A stretch of DNA of 64,000 bases from Macrostomum lignano. Its lineage: Eukaryota. Below the pieces are notes generated by a model. That model had not been told where the DNA came from, did no database searches, and saw nothing but the letters and a program-made list of their open reading frames with translations. Within the stretch, counting starts at the first letter, position 1. Each line of letters begins with the position of its first letter. The stretch covers positions 124,001 to 188,000 of the forward strand of contig NIVC01001458.1 of the NCBI GenBank assembly GCA_002269645.1, given 5' to 3'. Positions 1 through 55,686 of the stretch are shown here, in pieces. The translations under genes were made by a program, and so were the position numbers.

Positions 1-72
1 GCTAAGGCAGTATCTAAACTGCCCCCACTAAGGTAATTGCTATAAAAAACCACGCGAACTAATTTATTGCAG

Positions 73-763
73 AGTAAAATTGGCCGAGGTCATTAAGTCG
101 AGCGACAGTCGAAGGGTCCTTGTAACGCATGGCACGGACACACTGTTGGACACGGCCAGGTTTCTTCAGAGCTACCTAAAATCAGGGAGGGCAACATGTA
201 TATTGTCGATATTTTCTTTATAAATAATCAACTATCCTTACCAGTTAACTGCACTAAATATGGAATCCCAGTGCATGATGAATTGAAATTGATGAGTATC
301 AAAAGGCTCATTAAGGGATTAATCAGACTAGAAAGGCAATTCCCGTTCCGTCCCGTTCCGTCCCGTTCCGTCCCGTTCCGTCCCGTTCCGCCCCGTTCCG
401 TCCCGTTCCGTCCCGTCCCGTCCCGTTCCGTCCCATTCCGTTCCGAATTAGCACGACAGCTCACGCGCCTAATTCTCTACAGACTTTGACGTCGCCAGCA
501 CCGCAGCGCCAGTTGTAATTCTGACCGGCGCCAGACTGCCCGGCGCTTTCAAAGACACCGACGCCGATTTAAACATCGGCTTCGCCCTTGGCTGTCTGGC
601 CGCCGCCAGACCCGCTGCCAGAGACCAGGCCAATGGCGGCAATCCGACAACGTTGCTCAAGCCAGGTGTTTACACCTGTATGAACCTGCGACTCATGCGA
701 CCCGACGAAGTGGTCAGGAATTTGGAAACCGGAGCGTTTGACTGGCCTGCCTGTTCCGACTAA
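73..763 (+). CDS. Short-chain (single-domain, RrA-type) class 1 L-asparaginase, 3' exons; N-terminus lies upstream of or at the window edge
   Basis: Exon 73-197 after acceptor ttattgcag reads VKLAEVIKSSDSRRVLVTHGTDTLLDTARFLQSY, containing the asparaginase HGTDT catalytic motif. Exon 483-763 after ctctacag reads ...VVILTGARLPGAFKDTDADLNIGFALG...KPGVYTCMNLRLMRPDEVVRNLETGAFDWPACSD* (TAA 761-763). The donor at 198 (gtatat) is weak but phase-compatible. Confidence 0.85.
341..445. repeat. Pentamer microsatellite (TCCCG/TTCCG)n in the asparaginase intron
   Basis: Direct tandem tcccgttccg units. Confidence 0.95.
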
Positions 764-1058
764 CGCGTCACAAATATCCGCATCGATGCGACCGATATTT
801 CTAAGAAATTCAAAATCCTGCAGAAGTTGTCTGTGGTTGAGCACTAAGACAATCGGTGCAATAAATCACTTTTAGTTGCAAAAAAATTGTTTTGACTGAC
901 AAATTGATTTGATATTGTACGAGTATTTATTACACCGAATTCGATTTAAATACAAATTAGTCGCGCGCAGTAGACGATTTGAAATTGTTAAATATTACAA
1001 AAATCTGTCAGGCTGTGGGTGTGCTGGACTGTAATTAAACTTTTGGTCTTCTTCGATC

Positions 1059-1392
1059 GGGACTCATCAGGATTCTGGGATCAGGACTCATCGGGATTCT
1101 AGGATCGGGATTCATCGGGATTCTGGGATCGGGATTCATCGGGATTCTGGGATCGGGACTCATCGGGATTCTGGAATCGGGATTCATCGGGATTCTGGGA
1201 TCGGGACTCATCGGGATTCTGAGATCGGGACTCATCGGGATTCTAGGATCGGGATTCATCGGGATTCTGGGATCGGGATTCATCGGGATTCTGGGATCGG
1301 GACTCATCGGGATTCTGGGATCGGGACTCATCAGGATTCTGGGATCGGGACTCATCAGGATTCTGGGATCGGGACTCATCAGGAATCGGAGA
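1059..1392. repeat. 21-bp minisatellite (gggactcatcgggattctgggatc-type)
   Basis: About 16 tandem units; produces the spurious MSPDPRI repeat ORF. Confidence 0.95.
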
Positions 1393-1404
1393 TCGTGACT
1401 CATC

Positions 1405-1600
1405 TCGAGCTGCACACCCTCGCGCTCGTAAAAGTTGGCCATGTAGGCGGCCTTATCCTCATCGGACATGGAGGAGGAACCGCCAGACTCTTCCTTAGCA
1501 GTGTGTCGACACCCACCTTGCCTCCAGCATGTATTAAGTACTGTACGACTGAATATATCTCTTCAGAAGTGTGCAGTTGGTCAATCCAAAACCCCACGAA
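1405..1600 (-). pseudogene. Decayed Polinton/Maverick-type protein-primed DNA polymerase B fragment
   Basis: Two frames read EEIYSVVQY...VDTLL(fs)KEESGGSSSMSDEDKAAYMANFYEREGVQLE. This resembles the pPolB segment (IYEVWHF...YVNTFLKIKQEASG...EDKQ.YI..Y.EREGI.LD) as I recall it. It is frameshifted and ends at the minisatellite. Confidence 0.6.
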
Positions 1601-2006
1601 AGCTCAAGTTGAAAGCCTGAAAGAAATCTCTTCCATTCATTGCCTTGAGTACAGTGAAACCTGAGAACTCACAAAAACGGTTTGGAAAGAGGAGGTGAGA
1701 GAAAAATGAATGTACATGTACTGCTCATGAGAAGCCTGTGCGCACAACGCCTTCCATGCTTTTTACCATGCGATAGCAGCAAACTGTGCACACTGCTTTC
1801 TCATTTCTGTCCCCCGCTACTGCTTCGGTACAAAAAGAGCCAGCTTGGAAAAGACAAAATTTTATAAATTCTTGCCCACCACTGACGGGACTCCTGCGGA
1901 TAGCCCCCCCCCCAACGAACGTTCGTTGGAGAGCCCACCTAACGAACTGGTCGTTGCTACGTAGTCCTGTACCGGAATCTACAGAATTCGATAAGCTGCC
2001 GTGGTC

Positions 2007-5000
2007 ATGCGACCCGCTCGAAATGAGCGAGACAACCTGGAGAGAGACATGAAGGACAGGATGACACAAATGCGGCTGAGGCTGCTGGAGGAGGTGAGGT
2101 CGGGAGTTGAAGATGCTGAGCACAGACAGTATTGAGCTGAGTACAGACATTATTGAGCTGAGTACAGACATTATTGAGCTGAGTACAGACATTATTGAGC
2201 TGAGTACAGACAGTATTGAGCTGAGTACAGACAGTTGAAGATGCTGAGCACAGACAGTATTGAGCTGAGTACAGACAGTATTGAGCTGAGTACAGACAGT
2301 TGAAGATGCTGAGCACAGACAGTATTGAGCTGAGTACAGACAGTATTGAGCTGAGTACAGACAGTTGAAGATGCTGAGCACAGACAGTATTGAGCTGAGT
2401 ACAGACAGTATTGAGCTGAGTACAGACAGTTGAAGATGCTGAGCACAGACAGTATTGAGCTGAGTACAGACAGTATTAAGCTGAGTACAGACAGTATTGA
2501 GCTGAGTACAGACAGTATTGAGCTGAGTACAGACAGTATTGAGCTGAGTACAGACAGTATTGAGCTGAGTACAGACAGTATTGAGCTGAGTACAGACAAA
2601 ACTCGCACACAACCGCAGAAGCTGGAAGCTGAGCGGCGGCAGAGCGCGGCATCGCCGGGAGCAGCTTCGGGCGACTCCGAGCGTCAGCTGGAGGCGGCGC
2701 GGTCTCGTCAGGCTGAGCTCCGAGACCTGCTGGATCGCGAGCGTCAGCTGTCCGAAAGGCTGCGGCGCCAGGAGCCGCGGCCGCCGAGGCAGCAACGACG
2801 GGACAGCGGAGACGGTGGCAGCCCGAGGCACCGACGGCGAGGAGATGAAGGGCGGGGAGGTGAGAGTTTGAGAGAGATTCAATCAGGAGATTTAAAATTC
2901 CTGTTCAAAGCCCCATGCTGAGACAGCAAGGTTGAAGATTATTTTAGCGAATTTAGTCAGTCTTAGTGTCTGTCTTAGTGTCTATCTTAGTGTCTGTCTT
3001 AGTGTCTGTCTTAGTGTCTATCTTAGTGTCTGTCTTAGTGTCTGTCTTAGTGTCTGTCTTAGTGTCTGTCTGTGTCTGTCTTAGTGTCTGTCTTAGTGTC
3101 TGTCTTAGTGTCTGTCTTAGTGTCTGTCTTAGTGTCTGTCTTAGTGTCTGTCTTAGTGTCTATCTTAGTGTCTATCTTAGTGTCTGTCTTAGTGTCTGTC
3201 TTAGTGTCTATCTTAGTGTCTGTCTTAGTGTCTGTCTTAGTGTCTGTCTTAGTGTCTGTCTGTGTCTGTCTTAGTGTCTGTCTTAGTGTCTGTCTTAGTG
3301 TCTGTCTTAGTGTCTGTCTTAGTGTCTGTCTTAGTGTCTGTCTTAGTGTCTATCTTAGTGTCTATCTTAGTGTCTGTCTTAGTGTCTGTCTTAGTGTCTG
3401 TCTTAGTGTCTATCTTAGTGTCTATCTTAGTGTCTACCTTAGTGTCTGTCTTAGTGTCTGTCTTAGTGTCTGTCTCAGTGTCTGTCTTAGTGTCTGTCTT
3501 AGTGTCTGTCTTAGTGTCTGTCTTAGTGTCTGTCTTAGTGTCTATCTTAGTGTCTACCTTAGTGTCTGTCTTAGTGTCTGTCTTAGTGTCTGTCTCAGTG
3601 TCTGTCTTAGTGTCTGTCTTAGTGTCTACCTTAGTGTCTGTCTTAGTGTCTGTCTTAGTGTCTGTCTTAGTGTCTGTCTTAGTGTCTGTCTTAGTGTCTG
3701 TCTCAGTGTCTGTCTTAGTGTCTGTCTTAGTGTCTGTCTCAGTGTCTGTCTTAGTGTCTGTCTTAGTGTCTGTCTTAGTGTCTATCTTAGTGTCTGTCTT
3801 AGTGTCTGTCTTAGTGTCTGTCTTAGTGTCTATCTTAGTGTCTGTCTTAGTGTCTGTCTTAGTGTCTATCTTAGTGTCTGTCTCAGTGTCTGTCTCAGTG
3901 TCTGTCTTAGTGTCTGTCTTAGTGTCTGTCTTAGTGTCTGTCTTAGTGTCTGTCTTAGTGTCTGTCTCAGTGTCTGTCTCAGTGTCTGTCTCAGTGTCTG
4001 TCTTAGTGTCTGTCTTAGTGTCTGTCTTAGTGTCTGTCTTAGTGTCTGTCTTAGTGTCTGTCTCAGTGTCTGTCTCAGTGTCTGTCTTAGTGTCTGTCTT
4101 AGTGTCTGTCTTAGTGTCTGTCTTAGTGTCTGTCTTAGTGTCTGTCTTAGTGTCTGTCTTAGTGTCTATCTTAGTGTCTGTCTTAGTGTCTGTCTTAGTG
4201 TCTGTCTTAGTGTCTGTCTTAGTGTCTGTCTTAGTGTCTGTCTTAGTGTCTACCTTAGTGTCTACCTTAGTGTCTATCTTAGTGTCTGTCTTAGTGTCTG
4301 TCTTAGTGTCTGTCTTAGTGTCTGTCTTAGTGTCTGTCTTAGTGTCTATCTTAGTGTCTGTCTTAGTGTCTGTCTTAGTGTCTGTCTTAGTGTCTGTCTT
4401 AGTGTCTGTCTCAGTGTCTGTCTCAGTGTCTGTCTTAGTGTCTGTCTTAGTGTCTGTCTCAGTGTCTGTCTTAGTGTCTGTCTTAGTGTCTGTCTCAGTG
4501 TCTGTCTCAGTGTCTGTCTTAGTGTCTGTCTTAGTGTCTGTCTTAGTGTCTGTCTTAGTGTCTGTCTTAGTGTCTGTCTTAGTGTCTGTCTCAGTGTCTG
4601 TCTCAGTGTCTGTCTTAGTGTCTGTCTCAGTGTCTGTCTTAGTGTCTGTCTTAGTGTCTGTCTTAGTGTCTGTCTTAGTGTCTGTCTTAGTGTCTGTCTC
4701 AGTGTCTGTCTCAGTGTCTGTCTCAGTGTCTGTCTTAGTGTCTGTCTCAGTGTCTGTCTTAGTGTCTGTCTTAGTGTCTGTCTTAGTGTCTGAGTTTCTG
4801 GCTTACTACTCGTATCTTTAGTATCTGTCCTAATAATTGTCTTAGTGCCATCGTAAATCATCCTGCAAGTTTGAAACTCTGAAATAATATTACATCACTA
4901 TACGCATACGGATTTGTTTCACTATCTTCATGAGACGAGTCTAAAACGCCAATTATACTACTTACTCGTATCAGTATCGTTAACAATCGGTAACACTATC

Positions 5001-8000
5001 TCACTCTCATCTCACCCCAATACACATGTACAACAAATTGGCAAAATGTCTCGCTATGCACTACTTACTAGCAGTAGTATTAATTAGCAGCTCGCATGCC
5101 CTTACTAAAAATGAACCATATTAAATTTAATTTACCCTGTCATCGATTTCTTTTTCAAAGATCGCTTCTCCAACATGATGGAGATGATGATGATGCAGAA
5201 CTCCCAGATGCACAATCTGATGCTCAACCAGATGATGGCGCGGAATACAGCGGAGCTGCAGAAGCCGCCGCCCCCGCTGCCACCTCCGCCGCCGCCGCCG
5301 CCGCAGCCAATGTTCATGCCGATGCCAGGGTTTGAGTCTTTCATGCAGCAGCAGCGGCGGCCACCGGGGACGCCCTCACAGCCGAAAAAGTAAGTTGCTC
5401 AGCTAAAATGCCCCTGCTGTGGTGGCGTCAATGGCTGCATCAGAGGTGACTTTCAGGGCTGGCTGACAACCTCCCAGATCCTTAGTTGCTGTACCAACCT
5501 CCCAGATCCTCAGTTGCTGGGCCAGCCTCCCAGATCCTGAGTTGCTGGGCCAGCCTCCCAGATTCTCAGTTGCTGGGCCAGCCTCCCAGATTCTCAGTTG
5601 CTGGGCCAGCCTCCCAGATTCTCAGTTGGTTTTTATTCATAAACTTCAGCAACCAATATAAATGAGGTGAAGGAATATCCGAAATTTTTCGAAGATTTCA
5701 CCGCAGACATTCCGCATAAAAAAGCTTGACGAAGCAATTCTTTTTTCTTTCACGCCCTTGAAAAATCTATAGACCGGCTGATGCCACACCGAAGCCTGCG
5801 ACACCAGCAAAGGAGTCACCGAAAGGGGCTGCGAAGGGTAAGCTATTTAAAGTCAATAAAGGTTTGTATAGAGGCGGGGATTTTCACAGTAGTGGCGTAT
5901 GTCCTATCGCAATCGCGCCAATAAAAATAACGCTCCGCCAAAAATTGACGTCAGGAGCTCAAGTTTTTCCACCTCTTGTGTGTGATATCCACAAGGCCTA
6001 GGAGACAGGGGCGAACACCAAGAGACAAGGGGCACCCACCAAGGGACAAGAGTACCCACCAAAAGACAGGGGTCACCCACCAAAAGACAGGGGTCACCCA
6101 CCAAGAGGCAGGGGCGCCCATCGAGAGACAGGGGGCACCCACCAAGAGGCAGGGGGCACCCACCAAGAGACAGGGGCACACACCAAGACACAGGGGCGCC
6201 CTCCAAGAGACAGGGGCGCCCACCAAGAGACAGGGCGCGAGACAGGGGCGCCGACCAAAAGACAGGGGCGCCCACCAAAAGACAGGGGCGCCCACCAAGA
6301 GACAGGGGCGCCCACCAAGAGACAGGGGCGCCCACCAAGAGACAGGGGCGCCCACCAAAAGACAGGGGCGCCCAGCAATAGACAGAGGGCACCTACCAAG
6401 AGACAGGGGCGTCCATCAAGAGACAGAGGCACCCACCAAGAGACGAAGGGGCAATATCTCAAATTTATTGAGAATCCTATCGATCATTACAGCGGAGTCG
6501 GAGGATGAAGAGGAACAAGTCCCGTTTCCATTTCCTGGAAATAGTGAGTTATTTTATTTCAAATTCGTGCGCAAAACCTACAATTATTTCTACATTGACT
6601 TCCGGCTGACAAATTTGGCATTGCAGAAAGCCAGCAGAAACTAAGGAGACTGGCCTACACAGCGTTCTTCCTGGCTTCCCTGAACCGTCTAACAAATGAG
6701 GTTGGAAAAATGTCTTTAATGAGATTTTGCATTTAAAATGATGTCAATTGGGTAATGCTTTTCTGCTTTAAAAATCTCGTGCATTCGATTTGCAGAACAA
6801 ATTTCGACCCCGCTTCGATTTTCTATTCGACGTCCGCTTGAAAGAGATGCTGGAGACCCTGCATCGAATCTACAAGACTCCGGATGGCCCCTTGTACAGC
6901 GTCACCTTTGCCACGGTGATGGGGGACGAAGCGATGGAACTGACTGAGCTGATGAATGTGCCGAAGACGCTGAGCAAAGATGAGGAACGAGTTGTAGCTC
7001 AGGAGTTGGCCTACTGTATCGAGAATACAGTGTTTCAAGTTACCGATATAATGGTATAATAGCCTGTAGTTGCTAAACACTCTACTGTCAGTAAAAATTT
7101 CGACATTTACAGCCTATTTTTAGTTTACAACGCATAAACATTTCAGCCAACAAAAGGCATTCTTGGCACTCATCGGAAGTCGGGAGTTTTCGAGATGATT
7201 CGTTCTGGCAATTTGTTTCCGAAGGGCTACTTCTATGATATGGAGAAAGTGAGTGATATGTCCACCAAGCCCGAACCAAGATACAGGGACACCTACTAAT
7301 TAGGCAGGGACACCCAACAAGAGACACGGACACCAATCAAGAGACAGGGGTGCCCACCAAGAGACAGGGGTAACCCACCGAGAGACATGGACACCCACCA
7401 ATAGACATCGGTAGGAACACCCACCAATAAAAGACAGGTGCATCCACCAAGAGACAGGGGCACCCACCAGAGACCATGAGACACAAAATCCTTCGGGTTG
7501 CTGTTTTAACTAATTAAAACCCTGCGTACAGCACTGACAAAAAGTTCAACGGTTTTCTCTAAACGGAGATCGAAAGGGTTGAATTTTTGCATAGCCTTGA
7601 ATAGGGATTTATCAAAGACAAACTCTAGAGGCCAAGATGTGGCCATTTTTTCTAAACTAATAAAGTTGCCGTTTTCTTCTACTGTAGTTTTTCATAATTC
7701 TAAGCCATGCAATTTATTTTTAACGGGTTTTAATACACCAATTATATTCTCGACCAATCAGAACGCGATGGAATTTGACGACGAGGGCAGAACGAGCAGA
7801 GTGACCGACTGCAACGCCCGGATGCTGCTTATCGGCCTGTTTCTGATGCGAGCTCTGGTCGAAACGGTAGGCTAGATATCCCGCTTTACTACTCGCATTG
7901 TCTACTATAAGTAGTAAGGAAATTTAGAAATACTTCACAATTCGCTACAAAAACTATCCGCAGCTCTACCTCAAGACTGAGCACTACGGCATGGTTGTGG

Positions 8001-8717
8001 AAACTACTCAGAAAGCGGAGCGCAACATTCGCCTGGTGTCAACTCTACTCACCTACATCTATCGCAAAGTTGTGGGTCAGCTGGTTGTTATGGACCAGGG
8101 CACCAAGAAGGCTCGTGTGTCCATTCCAGTGCGTGAGGGTGCAGAAAACCGGGGGTTACGGGTTACGGGAGTGAGGTGGGTACAGAAAATAAGGGGTAGC
8201 AGACGGGGAGTGAGGTGGGTGCAGAAAATAAGGGGTAGCAGACGGGGAGTGAGGTGGGTACAGAAAATAAGGGGTAGCAGACGGGGAGTGAGGTGGGTGC
8301 AGAAAATAAGGGGTAGCAGACGGGGAGTGAGGTGGATGCAGAAAATAAGGGGTAGCAGACTGGGAGTGAGGTGGGTGCAGAAAATAAGGGGTAACATACG
8401 GGGAGTGAGGTGGGTGGAGAAAATAAGGGGTAGAAGAAAGGGAGTGAGGTGGGTGCAAGCGCCAACCAATCGGCGTGGAGCTGGACTGTACACATAAAGA
8501 TGGTCTGAAAATACTAAAATCTAAATATACTAAATCTCTAATATTTGTATGCTAAAACCAGGACGTCCCAAGCGAGCTAAGCGGCGTAATGCACACAGAC
8601 CAAGAGATCCGACCCGTGATAAGGGTGGTAAAGAAGAGCCTTGACTATGCCAACAATTTGCTCATGCACTGGTCAGAGGAGTACGTCAAAAGACTGCGAG
8701 GCGCCGGTTTTACTTAA
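2007..8717 (+). CDS. Coiled-coil, DUF4587-motif protein (C21orf58/PRR29-like), about 510 aa, 11 exons
   Basis: Phase-consistent exons: 2007-2093, 2619-2859, 5161-5389, 5773-5837, 6493-6543, 6627-6700, 6796-7053, 7147-7248, 7762-7866, 7964-8128, 8562-8717 (sum 1533 nt, stop TAA 8715-8717). The motif NMMEMMMMQNSQMHNLMLNQMM followed by poly-Pro resembles the DUF4587 LMMxQNAQMHQ signature. The true start may be further upstream (possible acceptor at 1994-1995). Confidence 0.75.
2110..2597. repeat. 21-bp minisatellite (attgagctgagtacagacagt)
   Basis: Tandem array filling the intron 2094-2618. Confidence 0.95.
2961..4792. repeat. 12-bp minisatellite (tgtctgtcttag)n, about 150 copies
   Basis: Tandem array in the intron 2860-5160. 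Confidence 0.97.
5467..5627. repeat. 28-bp minisatellite (ttgctgggccagcctcccagattctcag)
   Basis: About 5-6 tandem copies in the intron 5390-5772. Confidence 0.9.
5990..6445. repeat. 20-bp minisatellite (ccaccaagagacaggggcgc); degenerate copies also at about 7290-7480
   Basis: Tandem units in two different introns of the same gene. Confidence 0.9.
8164..8457. repeat. 39-bp minisatellite (gggagtgaggtgggtgcagaaaataaggggtagcagacg)
   Basis: About 7-8 copies in the last intron of the DUF4587 gene. Confidence 0.95.
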
Positions 8718-9294
8718 ATAACAATTCGACTCAGTGACTTAACAATGATTTATATTGCTACTGACATGCACGCTATGAAGTCAGTAGTAAGTTGCAGAAC
8801 TGGACATTAAATAAATGATAACAATGTTGAAACTTGCAAAATTTTCTTTCCAAAACTGCATTCAAATAACAACATTTGCACAAATGTAATTAATATGCTC
8901 CCTCAATCAGAATATGCAACGCGCTTGACTAATAGAATTTCTATTCTATAGAATTAATAGAATTTATAAAATTACAAACAACAACAATAAAAGTGACACA
9001 GCCGACACCAAAGATTGAAAAAAGAATAACATGAAAAAAATTAAAATTTTAATTGCAAATTTAGGAATCAAGTAAGCATTTTATGCGTCTCTCGTCTAGC
9101 AAGGAAGGAGTTTGGGAAGACGGAAGGCATGCACGAAGAACTGTGGAGGACAAAACTTTGCTGGAAACGTATTAGTGCATACTAAGTAGGCAGTAGTGTG
9201 CTACGCTAATTCAATGTCATTTTTGCGTAAATTTCTGAAAATAAATATTCAGGGTTAGAAGCGATTTTTATTGGCACATCTCATGAATGTGGTT

Positions 9295-12200
9295 AAGGGC
9301 TGACTCTCATGAGTGTGTTTAAGAACTGATTCTCATGAGTGTGTTTAAGAACCGATTCTCATGAGTGTGTTTAAGAACCGATTCTCATGAGTGTGTTTAA
9401 GAATCGATTCTCATGAGTGTGTTTAAGAACTGATTCTCATGAGTGTGTTTAAGAACCGATTCTCATGAGTGTGTTTAAGAACCGATTCTCATGAGTGTGT
9501 TTAAGAACCGATTCTCATGAGTGTGTTTAAGAACCGATTCTCATGAGTGTGTTTAAGAACCGATTCTCATGAGTGTGTTTAAGAACGATTCTCATGAGTG
9601 TGTTTAAGAACTGATTCTCATGAGTGTGTTTAAGAACCGATTCTCATGAGTGTGTTTAAGAACTGATTCTCATGAGTGTGTTTAAGAACCGATTCTCATG
9701 AGTGTGTTTAAGAACCGATTCTCATGAGTGTGTTTAAGAACCGATTCTCATGAGTGTGTTTAAGAATCGATTCTCATGAGTGTGTTTAAGAACTGATTCT
9801 CATGAGTGTGTTTAAGAACCGATTCTCATGAGTGTGTTTAAGAACCGATTCTCATGAGTGTGTTTAAGAACGATTCTCATGAGTGTGTTTAAGAACCGAT
9901 TCTCATGAGTGTGTTTAAGAACCGATTCTCATGAGTGTGTTTAAGAACCGATTCTCATGAGTGTGTTTAAGAACTGATTCTCATGAGTGTGTTTAAGAAC
10001 CGATTCTCATGAGTGTGTTTAAGAACCGATTCTCATGAGTGTGTTTAAGAATCGATTCTCATGAGTGTGTTTAAGAACCGATTCTCATGAGTGTGTTTAA
10101 GAACCGATTCTCATGAGTGTGTTTAAGAACCGATTCTCATGAGTGTGTTTAAGAACGATTCTCATGAGTGTGTTTAAGAACCGATTTCATGAGTGTGTTT
10201 AAGAACTGATTCTCATGAGTGTGTTTAAGAACCGATTCTCATGAGTGTGTTTAAGAACTGATTCTCATGAGTGTGTTTAAGAACCGATTCTCATGAGTGT
10301 GTTTAAGAACCGATTCTCATGAGTGTGTTTAAGAATCGATTCTCATGAGTGTGTTTAAGAACTGATTCTCATGAGTGTGTTTAAGAACCGATTCTCATGA
10401 GTGTGTTTAAGAACCGATTCTCATGAGTGTGTTTAAGAACCGATTCTCATGAGTGTGTTTAAGAACCGATTCTCATGAGTGTGTTTAAGAACCGATTCTC
10501 ATGAGTGTGTTTAAGAACCGATTCTCATGAGTGTGTTTAAGAACCGATTCTCATGAGTGTGTTTAAGAACCGATTCTCATGAGTGTGTTTAAGAACCGAT
10601 TCTCATGAGTGTGTTTAAGAACGATTCTCATGAGTGTGTTTAAGAACCGATTCTCATGAGTGTGTTTAAGAACCGATTCTCATGAGTGTGTTTAAGAACC
10701 GATTCTCATGAGTGTGTTTAAGAACCGATTCTCATGAGTGTGTTTAAGAACTGATTCTCATGAGTGTGTTTAAGAACCGATTCTCATGAGTGTGTTTAAG
10801 AACCGATTCTCATGAGTGTGTTTAAGAACCGATTCTCATGAGTGTGTTTAAGAACCGATTCTCATGAGTGTGTTTAAGAACTGATTCTCATGAGTGTGTT
10901 TAAGAACCGATTCTCATGAGTGTGTTTAAGAACCGATTCTCATGAGTGTGTTTAAGAACCGATTCTCATGAGTGTGTTTAAGAACCGATTCTCATGAGTG
11001 TGTTTAAGAACCGATTCTCATGAGTGTGTTTAAGAACCGATTCTCATGAGTGTGTTTAAGAACCGATTCTCATGAGTGTGTTTAAGAACGATTCTCATGA
11101 GTGTGTTTAAGAACTGATTCTCATGAGTGTGTTTAAGAACCGATTCTCATGAGTGTGTTTAAGAACCGATTCTCATGAGTGTGTTTAAGAACCGATTCTC
11201 ATGAGTGTGTTTAAGAACTGATTCTCATGAGTGTGTTTAAGAACCGATTCTCATGAGTGTGTTTAAGAATCGATTCTCATGAGTGTGTTTAAGAACTGAT
11301 TCTCATGAGTGTGTTTAAGAACCGATTCTCATGAGTGTGTTTAAGAACTGATTCTCATGAGTGTGTTTAAGAACCGATTCTCATGAGTGTGTTTAAGAAC
11401 CGATTCTCATGAGTGTGTTTAAGAACCGATTCTCATGAGTGTGTTTAAGAACGATTCTCATGAGTGTGTTTAAGAACTGATTCTCATGAGTGTGTTTAAG
11501 AACCGATTCTCATGAGTGTGTTTAAGAACCGATTCTCATGAGTGTGTTTAAGAACCGATTCTCATGAGTGTGTTTAAGAACCGATTCTCATGAGTGTGTT
11601 TAAGAACCGATTCTCATGAGTGTGTTTAAGAACCGATTCTCATGAGTGTGTTTAAGAACCGATTCTCATGAGTGTGTTTAAGAACCGATTCTCATGAGTG
11701 TGTTTAAGAACCGATTCTCATGAGTGTGTTTAAGAACGATTCTCATGAGTGTGTTTAAGAACCGATTCTCATGAGTGTGTTTAAGAACCGATTCTCATGA
11801 GTGTGTTTAAGAACCGATTCTCATGAGTGTGTTTAAGAACGATTCTCATGAGTGTGTTTAAGAACCGATTCTCATGAGTGTGTTTAAGAACCGATTCTCA
11901 TGAGTGTGTTTAAGAACCGATTCTCATGAGTGTGTTTAAGAACCGATTCTCATGAGTGTGTTTAAGAACCGATTCTCATGAGTGTGTTTAAGAACCGATT
12001 CTCATGAGTGTGTTTAAGAACGATTCTCATGAGTGTGTTTAAGAACCGATTCTCATGAGTGTGTTTAAGAACCGATTCTCATGAGTGTGTTTAAGAACCG
12101 ATTCTCATGAGTGTGTTTAAGAACCGATTCTCATGAGTGTGTTTAAGAACCGATTCATGAGTGTGTTTAAGAACCGATTCTCATGAGTGTGTTTAAGAAC

Positions 12201-12490
12201 CGATTCTCATGAGTGTGTTTAAGAACCGATTCTCATGAGTGTGTTTAAGAACCGATTCTCATGAGTGTGTTTAAGAACCGATCATGAGTGTGTTTAAGAA
12301 CCGATTCTCATGAGTGTGTTTAAGAACCGATTCTCATGAGTGTGTTTAAGAACCGATTCTCATGAGTGTGTTTAAGAACTCATGAGTGTGTTTAAGAACC
12401 GATTCTCATGAGTGTGTTTAAGAACCGATTCTCATGAGTGTGTTTAAGAACCGATTCTCATGAGTGTGTTTAAGTTCTCATGACCGATTC
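9295..12490. repeat. 26-bp satellite (gattctcatgagtgtgtttaagaacc)n, about 120 copies
   Basis: Highly homogeneous head-to-tail array with no spacers, between two convergent 3' ends. Confidence 0.98.
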
Positions 12491-19311: not shown

Positions 19312-22300
19312 ATGCCGGAGGGAAACTTTCTGACCCGGACGGTGGCCGATGTCTATCGGCTGGCCCAGAGCGAGCACCGCCGACGCAAGCGAGAGAAGCA
19401 GCGGCAGACCAACGGCGACGAGTCCGACAGCCTACAAGACGCGGCGCCTCCCGAGAATCTGTTCGATGCCGCCAAACGCGGCTGCGTCGATTTCATAGAA
19501 GCTCAGCTGGAGCGCGAAGGCCACTCGACTCTGTCCGAGCGGGATTCGGGCGGCCTCACCGCTGCTCACTGGGCCAGCCTGTCCGGCCAGCTCGGCGTCC
19601 TGCGCTTCCTGGCCGAACGCGGCGGCGTCGCCTGTTGCGACATGCCGGCAACTGGCAAGGAAGAGCTCGGCCAGCGGCCGCTGCACTGGGCCTGCGTCAA
19701 CGGCCACGTGCCCGTCATCGACTTCCTGCTTAGCCTGGGCGCCGATGCCAACACGCCGGACTCGGCGGGCGCCACTCCGCTGATTACCGCCTGCCAGCAC
19801 GCGCGAACCGTCGCGGCTGCCTTTCTGCTCACTCGCGGCGGTGCCCAGGCCGGCGCGGCCGACTGCGACGGCGACACGGCGTTGCACTGGGCGGCTTCGC
19901 GGGCCAACCCGGACCTGGTCCGCCTGCTGGTGCGCGCAGGCTGCGAACCGGGGCGCCGGGACCGGCACGGTCAGGCGCCGCTGCACCTCGCCTGCGCCGC
20001 CGGCCGGGCCGACGTCGCTCGCGACCTCTGCGAGTTGTACGGCGCCGATCCCCACGAGGTTGGTGAGGATGGCAACAAGTCAACCTTGGCTTTTGGAAGT
20101 GCTGCCCATCATTGTGGCAAACATTGTGGCCAGAGGAATGGGGGAGAGGAGAGGGAATAGAGGAGAAAGGAGAGAAGAAATAGGAGATGGAAGAGAAGAA
20201 AAAAGAAGAGAGAAGATTAAAGAAGACAGCTAAGAAGAGACACAAACCTTGAGCGGGCCGGATTGCCATTGTGAAGTTTCACAAGAGACCCGAAGACCGG
20301 ACAGAGAAGCTTCACGGGCCTGAGTTTGCCAACCCCTGACTTATAAAACCATCCTGCTGAATCTTACATACGCAGGCACCAATGTTGGGCGAGTTACTTT
20401 TAAAAAGTAACACGAATAGCAGCAGTAACGATTATTATTGACAAGAGAGTAACAAAAACTAAAAAAGTCACGATTAGTTACCGTTACTTTTAAAGTTATT
20501 TACTCAAAATGTTTTTCGAAGAAAGTAAGTTTTCTTTTGTTTACAAACTAAGAAAACTTGTCAGTTTTGTTGATGATTATCGCATTTCCAAATTTTTACA
20601 GTTTGTAATTACTTAATTGCAATTGTTTTTTTAAATAGCTGGAAACTATACTCAAGTAGTTAGGAAAGTAGTATATAAAGTAAGTTCTTATGACACAGCT
20701 GAGTGTACAATGAACCTCCCCCTGACTTGCTCATCATCAAATTTAGGTGCGACTGTTACTTGACATTTCCATTGCGTTAACTTGTGAACAAAACTCAAAT
20801 AACCTTTGCTGCATCTATACTGGTTTCTATAGTTCAGTCAGTCAGAATGAGAGCGAAGAGGAGAGAGGAGATAAAAAAGATGAGGAGAGCTGAGAAGGCC
20901 GGAGTTTGCAGACCCCTGATGTAGGAAATTCCTGCTTAGCCAAGCGAATCAAAAATGCTTTAACCAACCTTGGCCAAACCCCGCTACAGCCAGACGGCTC
21001 CGGTAGAACTCCATTCCAACTGGCCGCGGCAGGACGCCACGAAGATGTGGAACGCTGCCTACGCCGCCATCTGCTCAGCAGACATGCCGGGCAGGGTCAG
21101 CAGCCAGGCCGCCAACGCCAGCAAGGTCTGCTGGCCAGACTGACCGCTATTGGCAATGGCGGACCGGCTGTCTTCTTTGTGGCTTGTCTGGCTTGCTTCG
21201 GCTATCCGGTCTACTGGCTCCGCGTCCGGCCCTTGACCGCCGGCCTGCATCCGGGAGCTCACGCAGCCTTCCTGCTTGGCAACTGCGTCATGTGGCTGGC
21301 CTACTGCCTAGCCTGGCTAACTAATCCAGGCTACGTTGCTAAGGAGACCGCCGAATACAATCGGCTAATGCGACTGGCTGGCTCTACAGTGGCCGATATA
21401 GGCCTGTCCGGTATGGACAATCCGTTGGACAGGCTGTGCCACACCTGCAGAGCTGTGCGACCGCTCAGGTCTAAGCATTGTCGAGTGTGCGACCGCTGCG
21501 TCAGGGACATGGATCATCACTGTCCCTACGTGCGCAACTGCGTGGGTTCTGGCAATAGGTGAGTGTCTATTTCAGTTGTAGCTTGTACTGTGAATTAAAT
21601 GTCTGTCTGACTTAATGTCTCAGTGTCTTAACGTCTGTCTGACTTAATGTCTTAGTGTTTTAACGTCTGTCTGACTTAATGTCTTTGTGTCTTAACGTTT
21701 GTCTTTAATAATGTCTTAGTGTCTTAACGGCTGTCTGTCTTTATTAATTGATGGGTTCGACCTTTTTAAGCCTGTAGCTTCGGGCCTCAGAACTCAGAAA
21801 TGAATCACTTAAAGCTCTGCCCTCTCACTCCTGTCAGATGGTCAGCCCCGTGGTAGCAAGATTGTGGGCGAGCAGCAAGGTCCTATAGCTAAGAGAAGAC
21901 AGCGAGAGACAAGCAGGGAGAATTTGAAAGGTAGAGATTAGCTAATCCACAGATTAACCAACCCGCTGCCACCAGTCCGTGCGCCCCGGCTCACCAAACC
22001 GGAGCTATCGAAATCGGACTTCCGACTAGAGGGGCATTGCACTTACCTGCCATCTAGTGTCTTTTAGCTGTCTATCTCGAGGTCATAGCCGAATAGAAGG
22101 GACACTGCTGGGACTAAGATCGCATTGGCCATGCAGGGACAGAGAGGACTTTTGCAGGGGGTTCTTGCGCTGGCGAGCCTTTATACGCTACTTATATACG
22201 CTACTAAAAGTACTATTTCATTACCGAATTCCCAGAAGTACATGTACAAGTACACGTAACTGGCACTTGATGACACGTAAATGACACGTATTTTTGGCAC

Positions 22301-26280: not shown

Positions 26281-29200
26281 TCAATCGCTAGCATCCGAGC
26301 TGGCCTGTTTAGTTGGCGACTTGCGCTGTCGAGGACTCTGGGCAGTTTTAGCCCGACGATTCTTGATATCCAAATGCTGCTGTGGAATCCATTCCAGATT
26401 GTAGTTGCCGCCGGGCGACAGGCCGCCATTGTTGTTGTTAGGGGCTGAACCGTCGGCAGAGTCAGCTGACAGGGCGGCAGCTTTGGAAGATTTGACAGCG
26501 TGGCGAGACTTAGCGGCCAGCTTCTTAGCCGGTGTGTAAGTCTTCAGCAGGTACCAAATACCGGCACAGGCCAGGGCAGCCAGCACAATCAGGAAGATGT
26601 ACATGAAGAATGTCTCGCCATCGAAGCCTTCGTCGGGTTCAAATAGGGACACGGTCTGGTTGATAGCCGAGTGCAGATAGTTCTTGCCTTCGGCGTCGCG
26701 ATAGCCAAGTTGAACGGTGAGGCCGAATGACCTGGCGGCCAGCTGCGGGTCGGTGTTGAACTGATACACAAAGCTGGCCTCGCGGCCGGGCTCCACGTCC
26801 TGGCCGTGGTAGCGCACGGTGCTGAAGTTCTGGATGACGTAGCTCATGTCCATGGGATAGCGGAATGCGGCCGTGGCCAGGTCTACGTGGAAAGTTGAGT
26901 CGCCTTTGTTACGCATGTGCATGGCAACCCGGATGGTCTTGCCGGTGGGCAGGTCGAGCGAGCGGCCAACCTGGCCGGCGCCGGCCGGATAGAGGAACAG
27001 GTGAGACAGCTGGACCTTGTCCGATGGGCCCAGCTGCAGTTTGGTCATCTCGTCCTGGCCGAATTAGGTAGGATAATAATTAACTCATCTCAAATGCACA
27101 CCTCTATTTTTCCCGTTCTGATCTCCAATCTCCCATTCATCAGATCTTTAATCTCCCAATCAGATCTCCAATCTCATATTTAGATCTCTAATCTCCCATT
27201 CGTCTCTCTTATCTACCACTCCTATCTCGAATCTCCCACTCCCTAGATCTCATAATCTCCCATTCAGATCTCCAATGTCATGTTTAGATCTCTAATCTCC
27301 AATTCCTATCTCTTATCTCCCACTCCTATCTATAATCTCCACCAAGATCTCTTAATCTCCCATTCAGATCTCCAATCTCATGTTTAGATCTCTAATCTCC
27401 CATTCCTCTCTTATCTACCACTCCTATCTCGAATCTCCCATTCCCCAGATATCTAATCTCCCACTTCTATCTCTTATCTCCCACCTTATCTCTTAATTCC
27501 CATGAGATCCCCAATTTCCCCAGTTCAAGACTCTCAAGTTGCGATTAAGATCCACAATTAGATTCGCACATCCCTACCACTACTCACTTTCCACTATTAA
27601 ATCCCTATTTCCGAAAAATATTACAAGCCACAGCATAATCAGATCACCTAAAAAAGTCACTGCACAACAATCTCGCTATTTATTCAAACTTTACAGACAC
27701 AATCGTGGAAAAACTGCAATGAAAACAGTCGTTTTTTAGCAATTGTCTGCAAAAACTTTTTTGCTTTTAGGTCCGACCACCAAGTCTTTCACCAAAAAAT
27801 ACTGTCAAAACAGATCTGCTGGCTTTGATCTAACCTTGAGCAGATCAAAAAGTCGTTTTTTAAGCTCCTCTTCGGGAAGCCCGTCCAGTTCGTCGGCCAT
27901 ATTTTTAGCCTTTACAATAGCAAATATAGCAGCATTTTGCTCATATTTCTACTTATACAAGTAGACGAATTAGACGAGAGGCGAAAGAAATAAAACGGAG
28001 CGAAAAGACAAGTCACGTTGAACTGAACTGGCGCGCGCTGGGGGGTTGGGGCCTGGCGGAGCACCCACCCCAGTAAAACCCTTAGCAGTGCGCGCATGAT
28101 TCAGCAAACCCCAAGCCTGCTCTCTCAGCTAAGGCGCGCGTCCCCTAACACAGCGAGACAAAGCAGTTGAGTTCTGTGCAGTTGTTAGAAGTCGAAGCAC
28201 TATTTCCTACGCTCACAGACAAATACATGCAAACTGCAGAATATATTTGCTCTGAAAACTTGCAATGAAGAGAAATTGTGGAAAATAAATCATGCCAAAA
28301 CAAGATAAAATTTGAACATTATAACAACTTAAGGTTTAATAAATGCACTATTTAGACAATTAGATGTTGTGTGCATTTGTGTACTTGTAAATTTAACCAT
28401 TTTAATGATTGAAATGACTTCTTATAGACGATATGCTTGAGCAAAGCTGAACAAACTCACCTGTTGTTCAGCTGAAGGAGTGTCAGATGCCATGCCTGGT
28501 TCCCCAGCACCAGAGTCAGCTGCACTACCAGTTGGCACCTTTTCAGCTCGCTCTGCACCCTCAGACTCAACATTGCCTTCTTCTTCTAGCTGATCCTCAG
28601 GACTAGCTCCACCAGCAGCACTTTCTTGTGCTAGGACAGCATCTTAAAAGAAAAAGGGATAGGCCTATATTATATTGATTATATCAAAAGTATAAAATGA
28701 AATAGAATAATTATTGAAGGAATGCAATTAAACTACTTTTAAGACTATTCCAAATAGTAATTACTAGTTACATTTGTTTAATATATAGCTTTTTTCAAAT
28801 TGATATTAATTTCTATAAAAGCTTTTTGAATATAATATTTTTTCTTTAGGCAAATATTTAAAAAATCTTTTGAATTTGACTCTTAATACTAATATTATGT
28901 AAATGTTTTATAATAAATAAGTAATATTTAGCATTATTGCAAGTATTGCTAATAATAAAAATTGAAACAAAAATCAATTAATCAAAATTGCTGACCATTG
29001 CATACTTAAATATATAATAATAATAATAATAATAATATTATATATAATACTTAGAGTAATTGTTTGTAATTCTTTATTTGAAAGTATAAAGAGCCTCTTG
29101 CCCTTGACTTCATTATAAAATGTTTTCAACTGATTGAGAATAAATAGGTCAAAATGAAACTCAAACTGACATCAATTAGGGATCTACTGGTCGTTATCGT

Positions 29201-49217: not shown

Positions 49218-55686
<6,469 letters not shown>

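What the first reader, a model, noticed from the sequence alone, without database searches (positions are those of the whole stretch)
73..763. Intron-containing short-chain (RrA-type) L-asparaginase in an animal genome
Seen: the HGTDT catalytic motif is followed by VVILTGARLPG...DADLNIGFALG...PGVYTCMN...RNLETGAFD and a stop. The protein therefore ends where the N-terminal domain ends, with no C-terminal asparaginase domain and no ankyrin repeats. Established: the usual animal class 1 enzyme (ASPG/60-kDa lysophospholipase) is two-domain plus ankyrins. This C-terminal pattern instead matches the ~170-aa short-chain asparaginases typified by Rhodospirillum rubrum RrA (recalled as TVVLSGAMVPG...DAAFNIGFA...PGVYIAMHG...KNRGLGRFE). 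Inference: a domesticated horizontal acquisition or an overlooked patchily retained animal family. The GT-AG intron filled with a host-type microsatellite argues against bacterial contamination.
Basis: partly seen in the sequence, partly recalled or inferred. Interest (0 to 1): 0.75.

Follow-up and report, generated by a model that had tools for sequence, protein, structure and literature searches.

The report
Flatworm short-chain asparaginase-like gene
The window starts inside a real, intron-containing gene of the flatworm Macrostomum lignano. It encodes a half-length relative of bacterial asparaginase, an enzyme type described so far only in bacteria. This copy is unusually divergent and may no longer work as a normal asparaginase.

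Summary
Window 73-763 holds the last two exons (73-197 and 483-763) of a class 1 asparaginase-family gene. They are split by a 285-nt GT-AG intron carrying a (TCCCGTTCCG)n microsatellite, and TAA lies at 761-763.

The window is Macrostomum lignano DNA. A TRAP-alpha exon 25 kb away is 100% identical to a UniProt protein of that species.

The protein ends where 160-185-aa bacterial short-chain asparaginases (scASNases, prototype RrA) end. No C-terminal asparaginase domain or ankyrin repeat lies in the 6.7 kb of non-repeat + strand DNA scanned downstream, and AATAAA follows the stop.

RrA is by far the best solved-structure match. Short homologues exist in other flatworms (Fasciolopsis, and a fragment from Cichlidogyrus), a tardigrade, a dinoflagellate and a chlorarachniophyte. 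The flatworm sequences share a private 'PG.FK.TDA' signature, so the gene is old in flatworms and not a recent transfer or contaminant.

RrA's catalytic Lys158 is Arg here. That is a subfamily trait, also common on bacterial metagenome contigs. The M. lignano protein also departs at 10 of 36 highly conserved positions, so its activity is doubtful.

UniProt already carries a chimeric 550-aa 'Asparaginase' model of this locus or a near-identical copy. Verdict: new animal member of a known family, of moderate interest.

The parts
1..72 (+). 3' end of the preceding intron. The N-terminal third of the gene, with the nucleophile Thr / Lys19 / Tyr21 region, lies upstream of the window.
   Evidence: The acceptor ttgcag ends at 72. 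The in-frame ORF upstream of 73 shows no asparaginase similarity. UniProt model P0133 continues upstream with ...FAKDGQDISDVV|VKLAEV, and its tblastn match to the window starts at 74.
73..197 (+). Penultimate coding exon. Base 73 completes a split Val codon. It encodes VKLAEVIKSSDSRRVLVTHGTDTLLDTARFLQSYLKSGRAT. HGTDT at 128-142 carries the equivalents of RrA Thr87-Asp88.
   Evidence: Translation; Pfam PF00710; alignment to RrA and bacterial homologues.
198..482 (+). Phase-1 GT-AG intron of 285 nt.
   Evidence: Enumeration of in-frame GT/GC..AG pairs. Excluding the repeat it is 35% GC, against 57% in the exons.
341..445 (.). (TCCCGTTCCG) x10.5 microsatellite inside the intron.
   Evidence: TRF row, score 182. 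The same repeat is read as protein in the chimeric UniProt model P0133.
483..763 (+). Last coding exon with stop TAA at 761-763. It encodes ...PVVILTGARLPGAFKDTDADLNIGFALGCL...KPGVYTCMNLRLMRPDEVVRNLETGAFDWPACSD.
   Evidence: Translation. The C-terminus is in register with the bacterial scASNase and RrA C-termini. Alternative acceptors at 506 and 512 are possible.
602..652 (+). Lineage-specific loop insertion of about 17 residues (AARPAARDQANGGNPTT) between the NIGFALGCL helix and the KPGVY strand.
   Evidence: Alignments. An unidentified homologue (P0162) has a low-complexity insertion of about 30 aa at the same site, so this loop tolerates insertions.
686..688 (+). Leu codon (CTG) at the position of a Gly that is invariant in 82 bacterial homologues and in four eukaryotic or eukaryote-like ones (MNG -> MNL).
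   Evidence: Conserved-column table.
716..718 (+). Arg codon (AGG) at the position of the catalytic Lys (RrA Lys158 / EcAII Lys162).
   Evidence: Alignments. Literature: K158M inactivates RrA (PMC10949315).
860..865 (+). AATAAA polyadenylation-like signal 97 nt after the stop.
   Evidence: Pattern search. The 3' flank 764-1034 is 36% GC.

Best explanation
Window 73-763 is the 3' two-thirds (last two exons) of a nuclear, spliced gene of the flatworm Macrostomum lignano. It encodes a short-chain class 1 asparaginase-family protein (scASNase). [quoted passage not shown]

It belongs to the branch of the family in which the catalytic Lys of RrA (Lys158) is Arg and the N-terminal motif reads DKxYP..GYAFE. 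That branch is common on bacterial metagenome contigs and occurs patchily in eukaryotes. The gene was already present in an early flatworm ancestor and has been inherited vertically since. How that ancestor got it, by ancient transfer from bacteria or by older eukaryotic descent, is not resolved.

Inferred mechanism, by homology to RrA. The protein is cytosolic and oligomeric. Its active site lies at a subunit interface, where an N-terminal Thr (off-window) attacks an amide and Thr-Asp (HGTDT) plus the basic residue at position 158 help to hydrolyse the acyl-enzyme.

The M. lignano protein has Arg at 158. It also replaces an invariant Gly (in the window) and, in the near-identical annotated copy, the substrate-binding Ser. 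I therefore rate it about 40% likely to be an active L-asparaginase of the usual kind. The remaining 60% is split between an altered-specificity or low-activity amidohydrolase, a catalytically dead paralogue, and a decaying gene.
For: Shown here:
- Exon-intron structure and open frame.
- Family assignment by Pfam PF00710.
- RrA is the best solved relative, about 5 orders of magnitude ahead of two-domain enzymes. With a profile the scores are 1e-28 against 3.5e-11 for ASPG.
- The C-terminus is in register with 171-177-aa bacterial homologues.
- No C-terminal domain or ankyrin in the scanned parts of the next 8.5 kb on the + strand (764-2955 and 4793-9278).
- AATAAA after the stop, and an exon/intron GC contrast like that of host genes.
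- Host identity from a 100%-identical M. lignano TRAP-alpha and other animal genes in the window.
- A near-identical annotated M. lignano protein, P0133 = UniProt A0A1I8F7G6, is collinear with window 74-7868.
- Short homologues in Fasciolopsis buski (176 aa), Biecheleria and Norrisiella, and fragmentary ones in Cichlidogyrus casuarinus and Paramacrobiotus.
- The 'PG.FK.TDA' signature occurs only in M. lignano (two copies), F. buski, Cichlidogyrus and one unnamed fragment, 5 of 152 sequences.
- Arg at the Lys158 column in all named eukaryotic homologues, and in 37 of 71 full-length metagenome ORFs carrying the DKxYP/GYAFE motif, which ends in ...R(D/N)xxTGxF in the ORF listing. Two of these were checked and lie on compact bacterial contigs.
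- Full-length eukaryotic homologues score 30-60 bits higher on the Arg-type HMM than on the Lys-type HMM.

Literature: scASNases are 160-185 aa and are described from bacteria only. Lys158 is 'only moderately conserved', and K158M is inactive (PMC10949315).
Against: - The N-terminal third, with the nucleophile Thr, is outside the window, so completeness of this copy is unproven.
- No transcript evidence could be consulted.
- The M. lignano sequence is very divergent. The 134 aa score only 75 bits and tie between the Arg-type and Lys-type HMMs (75.3 against 76.1). It deviates at 10 of 36 highly conserved columns, against 4-6 of 37-45 in other eukaryotic homologues. That pattern fits relaxed constraint.
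- Identity to F. buski is only 34%.
- NJ bootstrap support for any eukaryote or flatworm clade is low: 60% in one sampling, 0-22% in the others.
- The tardigrade fragment nests among bacterial sequences, so some eukaryotic occurrences may be independent transfers or contaminants.
Confidence: 0.8

Rival explanations
1. Decaying or non-functional copy. The locus is a pseudogene in the making, or a catalytically dead paralogue, and is not a working enzyme gene.
For: - 10 of 36 highly conserved columns are changed, including an invariant Gly -> Leu at 686-688.
- In the near-identical copy P0133, the universally conserved substrate-binding Ser is Gly.
- HMM scores are low.
- The exon-junction loop is long (about 20 residues between ARFL and VVILTG, against about 10-22 in homologues) and there is a 17-residue low-complexity insertion at 602-652.
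- The only annotated model is a frame-hopping chimera.
- No full-length transcript-derived protein turned up in either protein search.
Against: - Both exons are open, with good splice sites.
- The exons keep a host-like high GC and GC3 against AT-rich flanks.
- The window copy and P0133 differ at only 2 of about 104 residues and both keep the frame.
- Arg at position 158 is a subfamily trait, not a private lesion.
- Flatworm proteins are generally fast-evolving (background knowledge).
Confidence: 0.25
2. Recent horizontal transfer from a bacterium into Macrostomum, later domesticated by gaining introns.
For: - The family is overwhelmingly bacterial, and its bacterial distribution suggests frequent transfer (PMC10949315).
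- The Arg-type branch is abundant on bacterial contigs.
- The distribution in eukaryotes is patchy.
Against: - The best bacterial identity is only 38%, in a species-representative genome scan and in a metagenome scan.
- There are at least two introns, and host-like composition.
- Homologues in a trematode and a monogenean share a flatworm-only signature.
- In 95% of bootstrap replicates the sister group holds only eukaryotic or unassigned sequences.
Confidence: 0.05
3. Fragment of an ordinary two-domain animal asparaginase (ASPG / 60-kDa lysophospholipase) whose C-terminal exons lie further downstream.
For: The UniProt model P0133 does splice out of the last exon before the stop (after ...RPDEV) into downstream exons.
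Against: - Those downstream exons belong to an unrelated coiled-coil/DUF4587-like gene and are read in shifting frames.
- No Asparaginase_C or ankyrin hit in the scanned + strand regions downstream.
- The ankyrin repeats at 19312-20157 are followed by a DHHC-domain exon at 20906-21559, read here as one ANK+DHHC palmitoyltransferase gene.
- The stop is in register with the scASNase C-termini.
- ASPG chains score far worse than RrA.
Confidence: 0.03
4. Bacterial contamination or assembly chimera.
For: The closest characterised relatives are bacterial.
Against: - The coding sequence is interrupted by a spliceosomal-type intron that contains a microsatellite.
- It lies on the same 64-kb window as three animal genes, one of them 100% identical to an M. 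lignano protein.
- An independently annotated M. lignano protein covers the same locus order.
Confidence: 0.01

Closest known systems
RrA, the short-chain L-asparaginase of Rhodospirillum rubrum, and the bacterial scASNase family (Zhang et al. 2024, Protein Sci 33:e4920; PDB 8uoo, 8uou and related entries)
   Same: - Single-domain architecture that ends at the same point.
- Best solved-structure match.
- HGTDT (Thr87-Asp88) is conserved.
- The strand and helix motifs VVILTG, DAxxNIGFA, PGVY and GxF are shared.
   Different: - Eukaryotic nuclear gene with introns.
- Arg in place of catalytic Lys158.
- Belongs to the DKxYP..GYAFE / R(D/N)xxTGxF branch, not RrA's YxxxxxxxVG / RKN branch.
- Two loop insertions.
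- Several invariant residues replaced.
- Only about 35% identity.
Arg-type bacterial scASNases seen on metagenome contigs (for example L096 and L098)
   Same: - Arg at the Lys158 column.
- The N-terminal GYAFE(F/I)G motif, seen for M. lignano only in the annotated copy P0133.
- About 160-170 aa.
   Different: - Intronless, on compact bacterial contigs.
- They have PE.F..SDA where flatworms have PG.FK.TDA.
- At most 38% identity.
- They keep the invariant Gly and Ser that M. lignano has lost.
Fasciolopsis buski KAA0183964.1, 'L-asparaginase/GlutRNAGln amidotransferase subunit D' (176 aa). Also the fragmentary Cichlidogyrus casuarinus KAL3312461.1 (65 aa, no significant Pfam hit on its own).
   Same: - Flatworm proteins of the same family. 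F. buski is full-length and short-chain.
- Arg at position 158.
- The flatworm-private PG.FK.TDA signature.
   Different: - Only 34% identity to F. buski.
- F. buski keeps Ser58 and the MxxG Gly.
- Neither protein has been studied experimentally, as far as my literature searches show.
Animal ASPG (60-kDa lysophospholipase/asparaginase; guinea-pig structures 4r8k, 5dnc)
   Same: Homologous N-terminal class 1 asparaginase fold, and the HGTDT motif.
   Different: ASPG has the C-terminal asparaginase domain and ankyrin repeats. This protein has neither. Similarity is much weaker than to RrA.

Membership tests
Short-chain class 1 L-asparaginases (scASNase, RrA family) | Chain of about 160-185 aa, homologous only to the N-terminal domain of class 1 asparaginases | tested here: inconclusive
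   The C-terminal end is in register with RrA and with 171-177-aa homologues. The N-terminus is outside the window, so total length is unknown. The F. buski homologue is 176 aa. With its two insertions the M. lignano protein would be about 200 aa.
Short-chain class 1 L-asparaginases (scASNase, RrA family) | No C-terminal asparaginase domain in the gene or immediately downstream | tested here: met
   TAA at 761-763, AATAAA at 860-865, and no PF17763 or ankyrin hit in the + strand frames of 764-2955 and 4793-9278.
Short-chain class 1 L-asparaginases (scASNase, RrA family) | Sequence closer to scASNases than to long-chain class 1 enzymes (a separate region of sequence space) | tested here: met
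   PDB phmmer gives RrA 37 bits (E = 3e-8) and the best long-chain enzyme 21.6 bits (E = 2e-3). All database relatives with E <= 1e-3 that are full-length are short or are duplicated short units.
Short-chain class 1 L-asparaginases (scASNase, RrA family) | Thr87-Asp88 (the TD of HGTDT) | tested here: met
   HGTDT at 128-142.
Short-chain class 1 L-asparaginases (scASNase, RrA family) | Catalytic Lys158. The family's describers note it is only moderately conserved. | tested here: not met
   Arg (AGG, 716-718) aligns with Lys158. The same Arg is found throughout one large branch of the family. This argues against RrA-like catalysis. It does not argue against family membership.
Short-chain class 1 L-asparaginases (scASNase, RrA family) | Nucleophile Thr16, Lys19 and Tyr21 in the N-terminal hairpin | not testable with these tools
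   This region lies upstream of the window. The annotated copy P0133 is also truncated, starting at ...GGYAFEFGD. F. buski, Biecheleria and Norrisiella keep T, K and Y.
Short-chain class 1 L-asparaginases (scASNase, RrA family) | Substrate-binding Ser (RrA Ser58 / EcAII Ser58) | tested here: inconclusive
   The residue is off-window. In the near-identical copy P0133 the KDS motif reads KDG. The upstream exon of the window's own copy was not seen.
Short-chain class 1 L-asparaginases (scASNase, RrA family) | Homotetramer, cytosolic, L-Asn hydrolysis with millimolar Km | not testable with these tools
   This needs expression and assay.
Animal ASPG / 60-kDa lysophospholipase | N-terminal plus C-terminal asparaginase domains followed by ankyrin repeats | tested here: not met
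   The ankyrin repeats at 19312-20157 are followed by a DHHC-domain exon at 20906-21559, read here as one ANK+DHHC gene.
GatD (Glu-tRNA(Gln) amidotransferase subunit D) | Two-domain asparaginase-like core with an extra N-terminal domain, about 400-440 aa | tested here: not met
   NCBIfam GatD models score only 12.5 bits against cut-offs of 310-324. The 'subunit D' name on the F. buski protein is an automatic label.

The most novel reading that the evidence does not exclude
Flatworms, and some protists, carry a vertically inherited, spliced branch of the short-chain asparaginase family in which Arg replaces the catalytic Lys. The proteins would be genuine enzymes with changed chemistry or substrate. 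For example, Lys19 might take over as the base, or the target might be an amide other than free L-Asn. That would give animals a second, unrecognised class 1 amidohydrolase alongside ASPG.
Probability: 0.25. Interest if true: 0.6.

Novelty: new member of a known kind. Interest (0 to 1): 0.45.

Why it matters
Short-chain asparaginases were defined in 2024 as a bacterial family, and interest in them is partly therapeutic because of their small size. This work shows that intron-bearing members sit in animal genomes (flatworms including parasitic ones, and possibly a tardigrade) and in protist transcriptomes. That extends the family to eukaryotes.

It also gives a concrete case for testing ancient bacterium-to-eukaryote transfer against differential loss.

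It draws attention to a large Arg-for-Lys158 branch that the mechanistic model built on RrA does not cover, since K158M is inactive in RrA.

There is a practical point for annotation too. The existing UniProt model of this M. lignano locus or a near-identical copy is a chimera and should be split.

Tried and rejected
1. The word-indexed protein search with the spliced 134-aa peptide found only three Patescibacteria proteins. I first read this as 'no annotated orthologue'. That was wrong. The exhaustive search found the M. lignano UniProt entry and other eukaryotic homologues.

2. The profile search from that first alignment was swamped by the Patescibacteria branch (HGTYT, Ser at position 19) and told nothing about the nearest relatives.

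3. I first concluded that Arg158 plus GYAFE was a eukaryote-only synapomorphy, because 171 of 171 bacterial sequences had Lys. I rejected this after the metagenome scan. The earlier bacterial sample was biased by the search patterns used.

4. NJ trees with three different samplings did not resolve eukaryote or flatworm monophyly. No ML program was available. I rely instead on signature characters and HMM scores.

6. Literature searches for eukaryotic scASNases, flatworm asparaginases and K162R mutants found nothing relevant.

7. A codon-usage likelihood test against three host exons was uninformative (-1.29 against -1.28 per codon).
Full report
**Observation**

- After an acceptor (ttgcag, ending at 72) an open frame reads VKLAEVIKSSDSRRVLVTHGTDTLLDTARFLQSYLKSGRAT. 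HGTDT is at 128-142.
- A donor (CAT|GTATAT) follows at 197|198, and an acceptor with a good pyrimidine tract (CCTAATTCTCTACAG|) at 482|483.
- The frame then continues with (Y)FDVASTAAPVVILTGARLPGAFKDTDADLNIGFALGCL...KPGVYTCMNLRLMRPDEVVRNLETGAFDWPACSD and TAA at 761-763.
- The 285-nt intron holds a (TCCCGTTCCG) x10.5 microsatellite at 341-445. Read in frame it carries 8 stops, so splicing is required.
- Among all in-frame GT/GC..AG combinations that keep the ORF, 198..482 preserves the conserved ARFL segment and has the best acceptor. Acceptors at 506 and 512 remain possible and would remove 8-10 loop residues.
- The spliced 134-aa peptide passes Pfam's threshold for PF00710, Asparaginase N-terminal (34.1 against 22.5 bits).

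**Whose genome**

- The ORF at 26284-27048(-) is a TRAP-alpha exon, 100% identical to a UniProt protein of Macrostomum lignano.
- The window also carries ankyrin exons followed by a DHHC exon, read here as one palmitoyltransferase gene (19312-21559), and a homeodomain exon near 53187.
- Tandem repeats are dense throughout, with 68 TRF rows.
- The asparaginase exons are 57% GC (GC3 64%). The non-repeat intron is 35% GC and the 3' flank 36%. The neighbouring host exons show the same high GC, 58-69%.
- This is flatworm nuclear DNA, not a contaminant.

**Short chain or truncated?**

- The stop aligns within about three residues of the C-termini of 171-177-aa bacterial homologues and of RrA.
- AATAAA lies 97 nt downstream of the stop.
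- Three-frame translations of the + strand at 764-2955 and 4793-9278 give no Asparaginase_C or ankyrin hit.
- In the PDB, the RrA chains are the best match (E = 3e-8). The best two-domain enzymes reach only about 2e-3.
- With a profile, RrA scores 1e-28 and guinea-pig ASPG 3.5e-11.
- The architecture is therefore that of the short-chain asparaginases (scASNases). Zhang et al. 2024 defined these as a separate, bacterial, 160-185-aa family of class 1 enzymes (PMC10949315).

**Relatives**

The word-indexed search found only Patescibacteria proteins at 31-35% identity, on bacterial contigs.

The exhaustive search with the last exon was more telling. Names came from the cluster look-ups.
- P0133 = UniProt A0A1I8F7G6, 'Asparaginase', M. 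lignano, 550 aa. It differs from the window protein at 2 of about 104 comparable residues.
  - Mapped back by tblastn, it is collinear with window 74-7868.
  - It reads the microsatellite as protein, leaves the last exon after ...RPDEV, and hops between frames through the exons of the next gene.
  - It is a chimeric automatic model of this locus or of a near-identical copy.
  - It supplies part of the upstream sequence: ...GGYAFEFGDSGYCRQLL...FAKDGQDISDVV|VKLAEV.
- P0142: Fasciolopsis buski (trematode), 176 aa.
- P0138: Cichlidogyrus casuarinus (monogenean), a 65-aa fragment with no significant Pfam hit on its own.
- P0147: Paramacrobiotus metropolitanus (tardigrade), 116 aa.
- P0143: Biecheleria cincta (dinoflagellate), 228 aa.
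- P0161: Norrisiella sphaerica (chlorarachniophyte), 239 aa.

None of these has an Asparaginase_C domain (for those tested). Scans of one genome per bacterial or archaeal species, and of JGI metagenomes, found hundreds of relatives but none above 38% identity.

**The catalytic lysine**

- RrA's five critical residues are Thr16, Tyr21, Thr87, Asp88 and Lys158, and K158M is inactive.
- In the window protein Thr87-Asp88 are present (HGTDT).
- The Lys158 column holds Arg (AGG, 716-718).
- All named eukaryotic homologues also have Arg.
- I first took this, together with the DKxYP..GYAFE(F/I)G N-terminal motif, for a eukaryotic synapomorphy, because 171 bacterial sequences all had Lys.
- The metagenome scan overturned that. 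37 of 71 full-length metagenome ORFs carry the DKxYP..GYAFE motif, and in the ORF listing these end in ...R(D/N)xxTGxF.
- The two such contigs I checked, L096 and L098, are compact bacterial contigs.
- So the family has at least three branches:
  - Lys-type, like RrA.
  - Arg-type.
  - A Patescibacteria type with HGTYT and Ser at position 19.
- This agrees with the remark by the family's describers that Lys158 is 'only moderately conserved'.
- HMMs built from the bacterial branches place the full-length eukaryotic proteins in the Arg-type. The margins are 172 against 139 bits (F. buski), 202 against 149 (Biecheleria) and 217 against 155 (Norrisiella).

**How divergent is the M. lignano protein?**

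- Its 134 aa score only about 75 bits and tie between the Arg-type and Lys-type HMMs.
- With the N-terminal piece from P0133 added, the Arg-type wins, 96 against 82 bits.
- At columns that are at least 85% conserved in 82 bacterial sequences, it differs at 10 of 36. Other eukaryotic members differ at 4-6 of 37-45.
  - An otherwise invariant Gly is replaced: MNG becomes MNL, with Leu at 686-688.
  - In P0133's upstream part, the universally conserved substrate-binding Ser is replaced: KDS becomes KDG.
- It also has a long loop at the exon junction and a 17-residue insertion at 602-652. An unidentified homologue is also expanded at that second site.
- The exons are nonetheless intact and compositionally maintained. 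Two copies agree almost perfectly.
- I therefore cannot decide between a fast-evolving enzyme with altered properties and a protein that has lost catalysis.

**Origin**

- Neighbour-joining trees on 101-162 columns separate the three branches. They tend to put M. lignano next to F. buski, an unnamed fragment (P0135) and the protist sequences, as sister to the bacterial Arg-type.
- In 95% of bootstrap replicates M. lignano's sister group contains only eukaryotic or unassigned sequences.
- Support for any exact eukaryote or flatworm clade is poor. It is 60% in one sampling and 0-22% in the others.
- The tardigrade fragment nests among bacteria.
- A discrete character is more informative. The motif TG...PG.FK.TDA occurs only in the two M. 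lignano copies, F. buski, Cichlidogyrus and P0135. That is 5 of 152 sequences; the others mostly have PE or PA with SDA.
- Macrostomorpha and Neodermata span most of rhabditophoran flatworm diversity (background knowledge).
- This points to a single origin early in flatworm evolution and vertical inheritance since. It argues against a recent transfer into Macrostomum.
- Whether the ancestor obtained the gene from a bacterium or inherited it from earlier eukaryotes cannot be settled with these data.

**Verdict**

- What is new relative to the literature I could search is the presence of this bacterial-described family in animals and protists (searches found nothing).
- Databases already label some of these proteins automatically.
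- The functional label needs care. The protein belongs to the Arg-for-Lys158 branch and is unusually degenerate in M. lignano.

Noticed in passing
window 74-7868 (compared with UniProt A0A1I8F7G6 = P0133): The only annotated M. lignano 'Asparaginase' is a 550-aa chimeric model. It translates the intronic microsatellite, skips the true C-terminus, and runs through the exons of the next gene in shifting frames. The database entry should be split.
   Followed up: yes
window ~2001-2880 and 5150-7870, + strand: A downstream gene with coiled-coil-like, Arg/Glu-rich exons (for example KTRTQPQKLEAERRQ...RSRQAELRDLLDRERQLSERLRRQ) and a weak DUF4587 hit (MMEMMMMQNSQMHNLMLNQMMARNTAELQK, about 5170-5260). 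Its first exon is interrupted by a 21/65-nt minisatellite at 2105-2598 that stays open in frame.
   Followed up: partly
window 19312-20157 and 20906-21559, + strand: Exons with ankyrin repeats (Ank_2, E = 7e-50) followed by an exon with a DHHC domain (E = 8e-17), read here as one ANK+DHHC palmitoyltransferase gene, ZDHHC13/17-like by architecture. These are the only ankyrin repeats found in the parts of the window examined, and they do not belong to the asparaginase gene.
   Followed up: partly
window 26284-27048, - strand: A large terminal exon of translocon-associated protein alpha (TRAP_alpha, E = 8e-18), 100% identical to an M. lignano UniProt entry. Two further database proteins are 86% identical, which suggests a diverged paralogue or a sister species.
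   Followed up: partly
window ~53187-53420, + strand (and the GC-rich, Ala/Gly-rich ORF at 49218-50219): A homeodomain C-terminal half ([17 protein letters not shown]; Pfam Homeodomain, E = 7.5e-10) that runs straight into a (TATC)n microsatellite. It is probably the last homeobox exon of a paired-like gene.
   Followed up: no
whole window: An exceptional load of mini- and microsatellites: 68 TRF rows. Examples are a 1.8-kb 12-mer array at 2956-4792, a 3.2-kb 26-mer array at 9279-12474, and several (ATAG)n, (TATC)n and (GTTA)n arrays longer than 1 kb. Many generate long spurious ORFs on both strands.
   Followed up: no
P0001-P0120 (database proteins, mostly Patescibacteria): A large branch of 170-180-aa scASNase homologues has HGTYT instead of HGTDT (Asp88 -> Tyr in 120 of 120) and Ser instead of Lys19 (120 of 120), while keeping Thr16 and Lys158. 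This is another uncharacterised active-site variant of the family.
   Followed up: partly
P0150 (326 aa) and P0137 (532 aa), database proteins: These proteins consist of two tandem short-chain asparaginase units in one chain, an independent route to a 'two-domain' enzyme. In P0137 the first unit is degenerate.
   Followed up: no
P0134, P0139, P0140 (unnamed ENA/JGI fragments): ORF fragments of Arg-type or related homologues begin with intron-like residues ending in ...LQ or ...GQ (that is, CAG), directly before the V(I/V)(V/I)(L/F)TG strand. This hints that unidentified eukaryotes have an intron at nearly the same position as the window's 198-482 intron. P0139 and P0144 are identical downstream of that point and differ upstream.
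   Followed up: partly
window 1035-1469, - strand: An ATG-started ORF, MSDEDKAAYMANFYEREGVQLE..., that then runs into the 24-nt minisatellite at 1055-1404. It may be the first exon of a minus-strand gene, or a repeat artefact.
   Followed up: no
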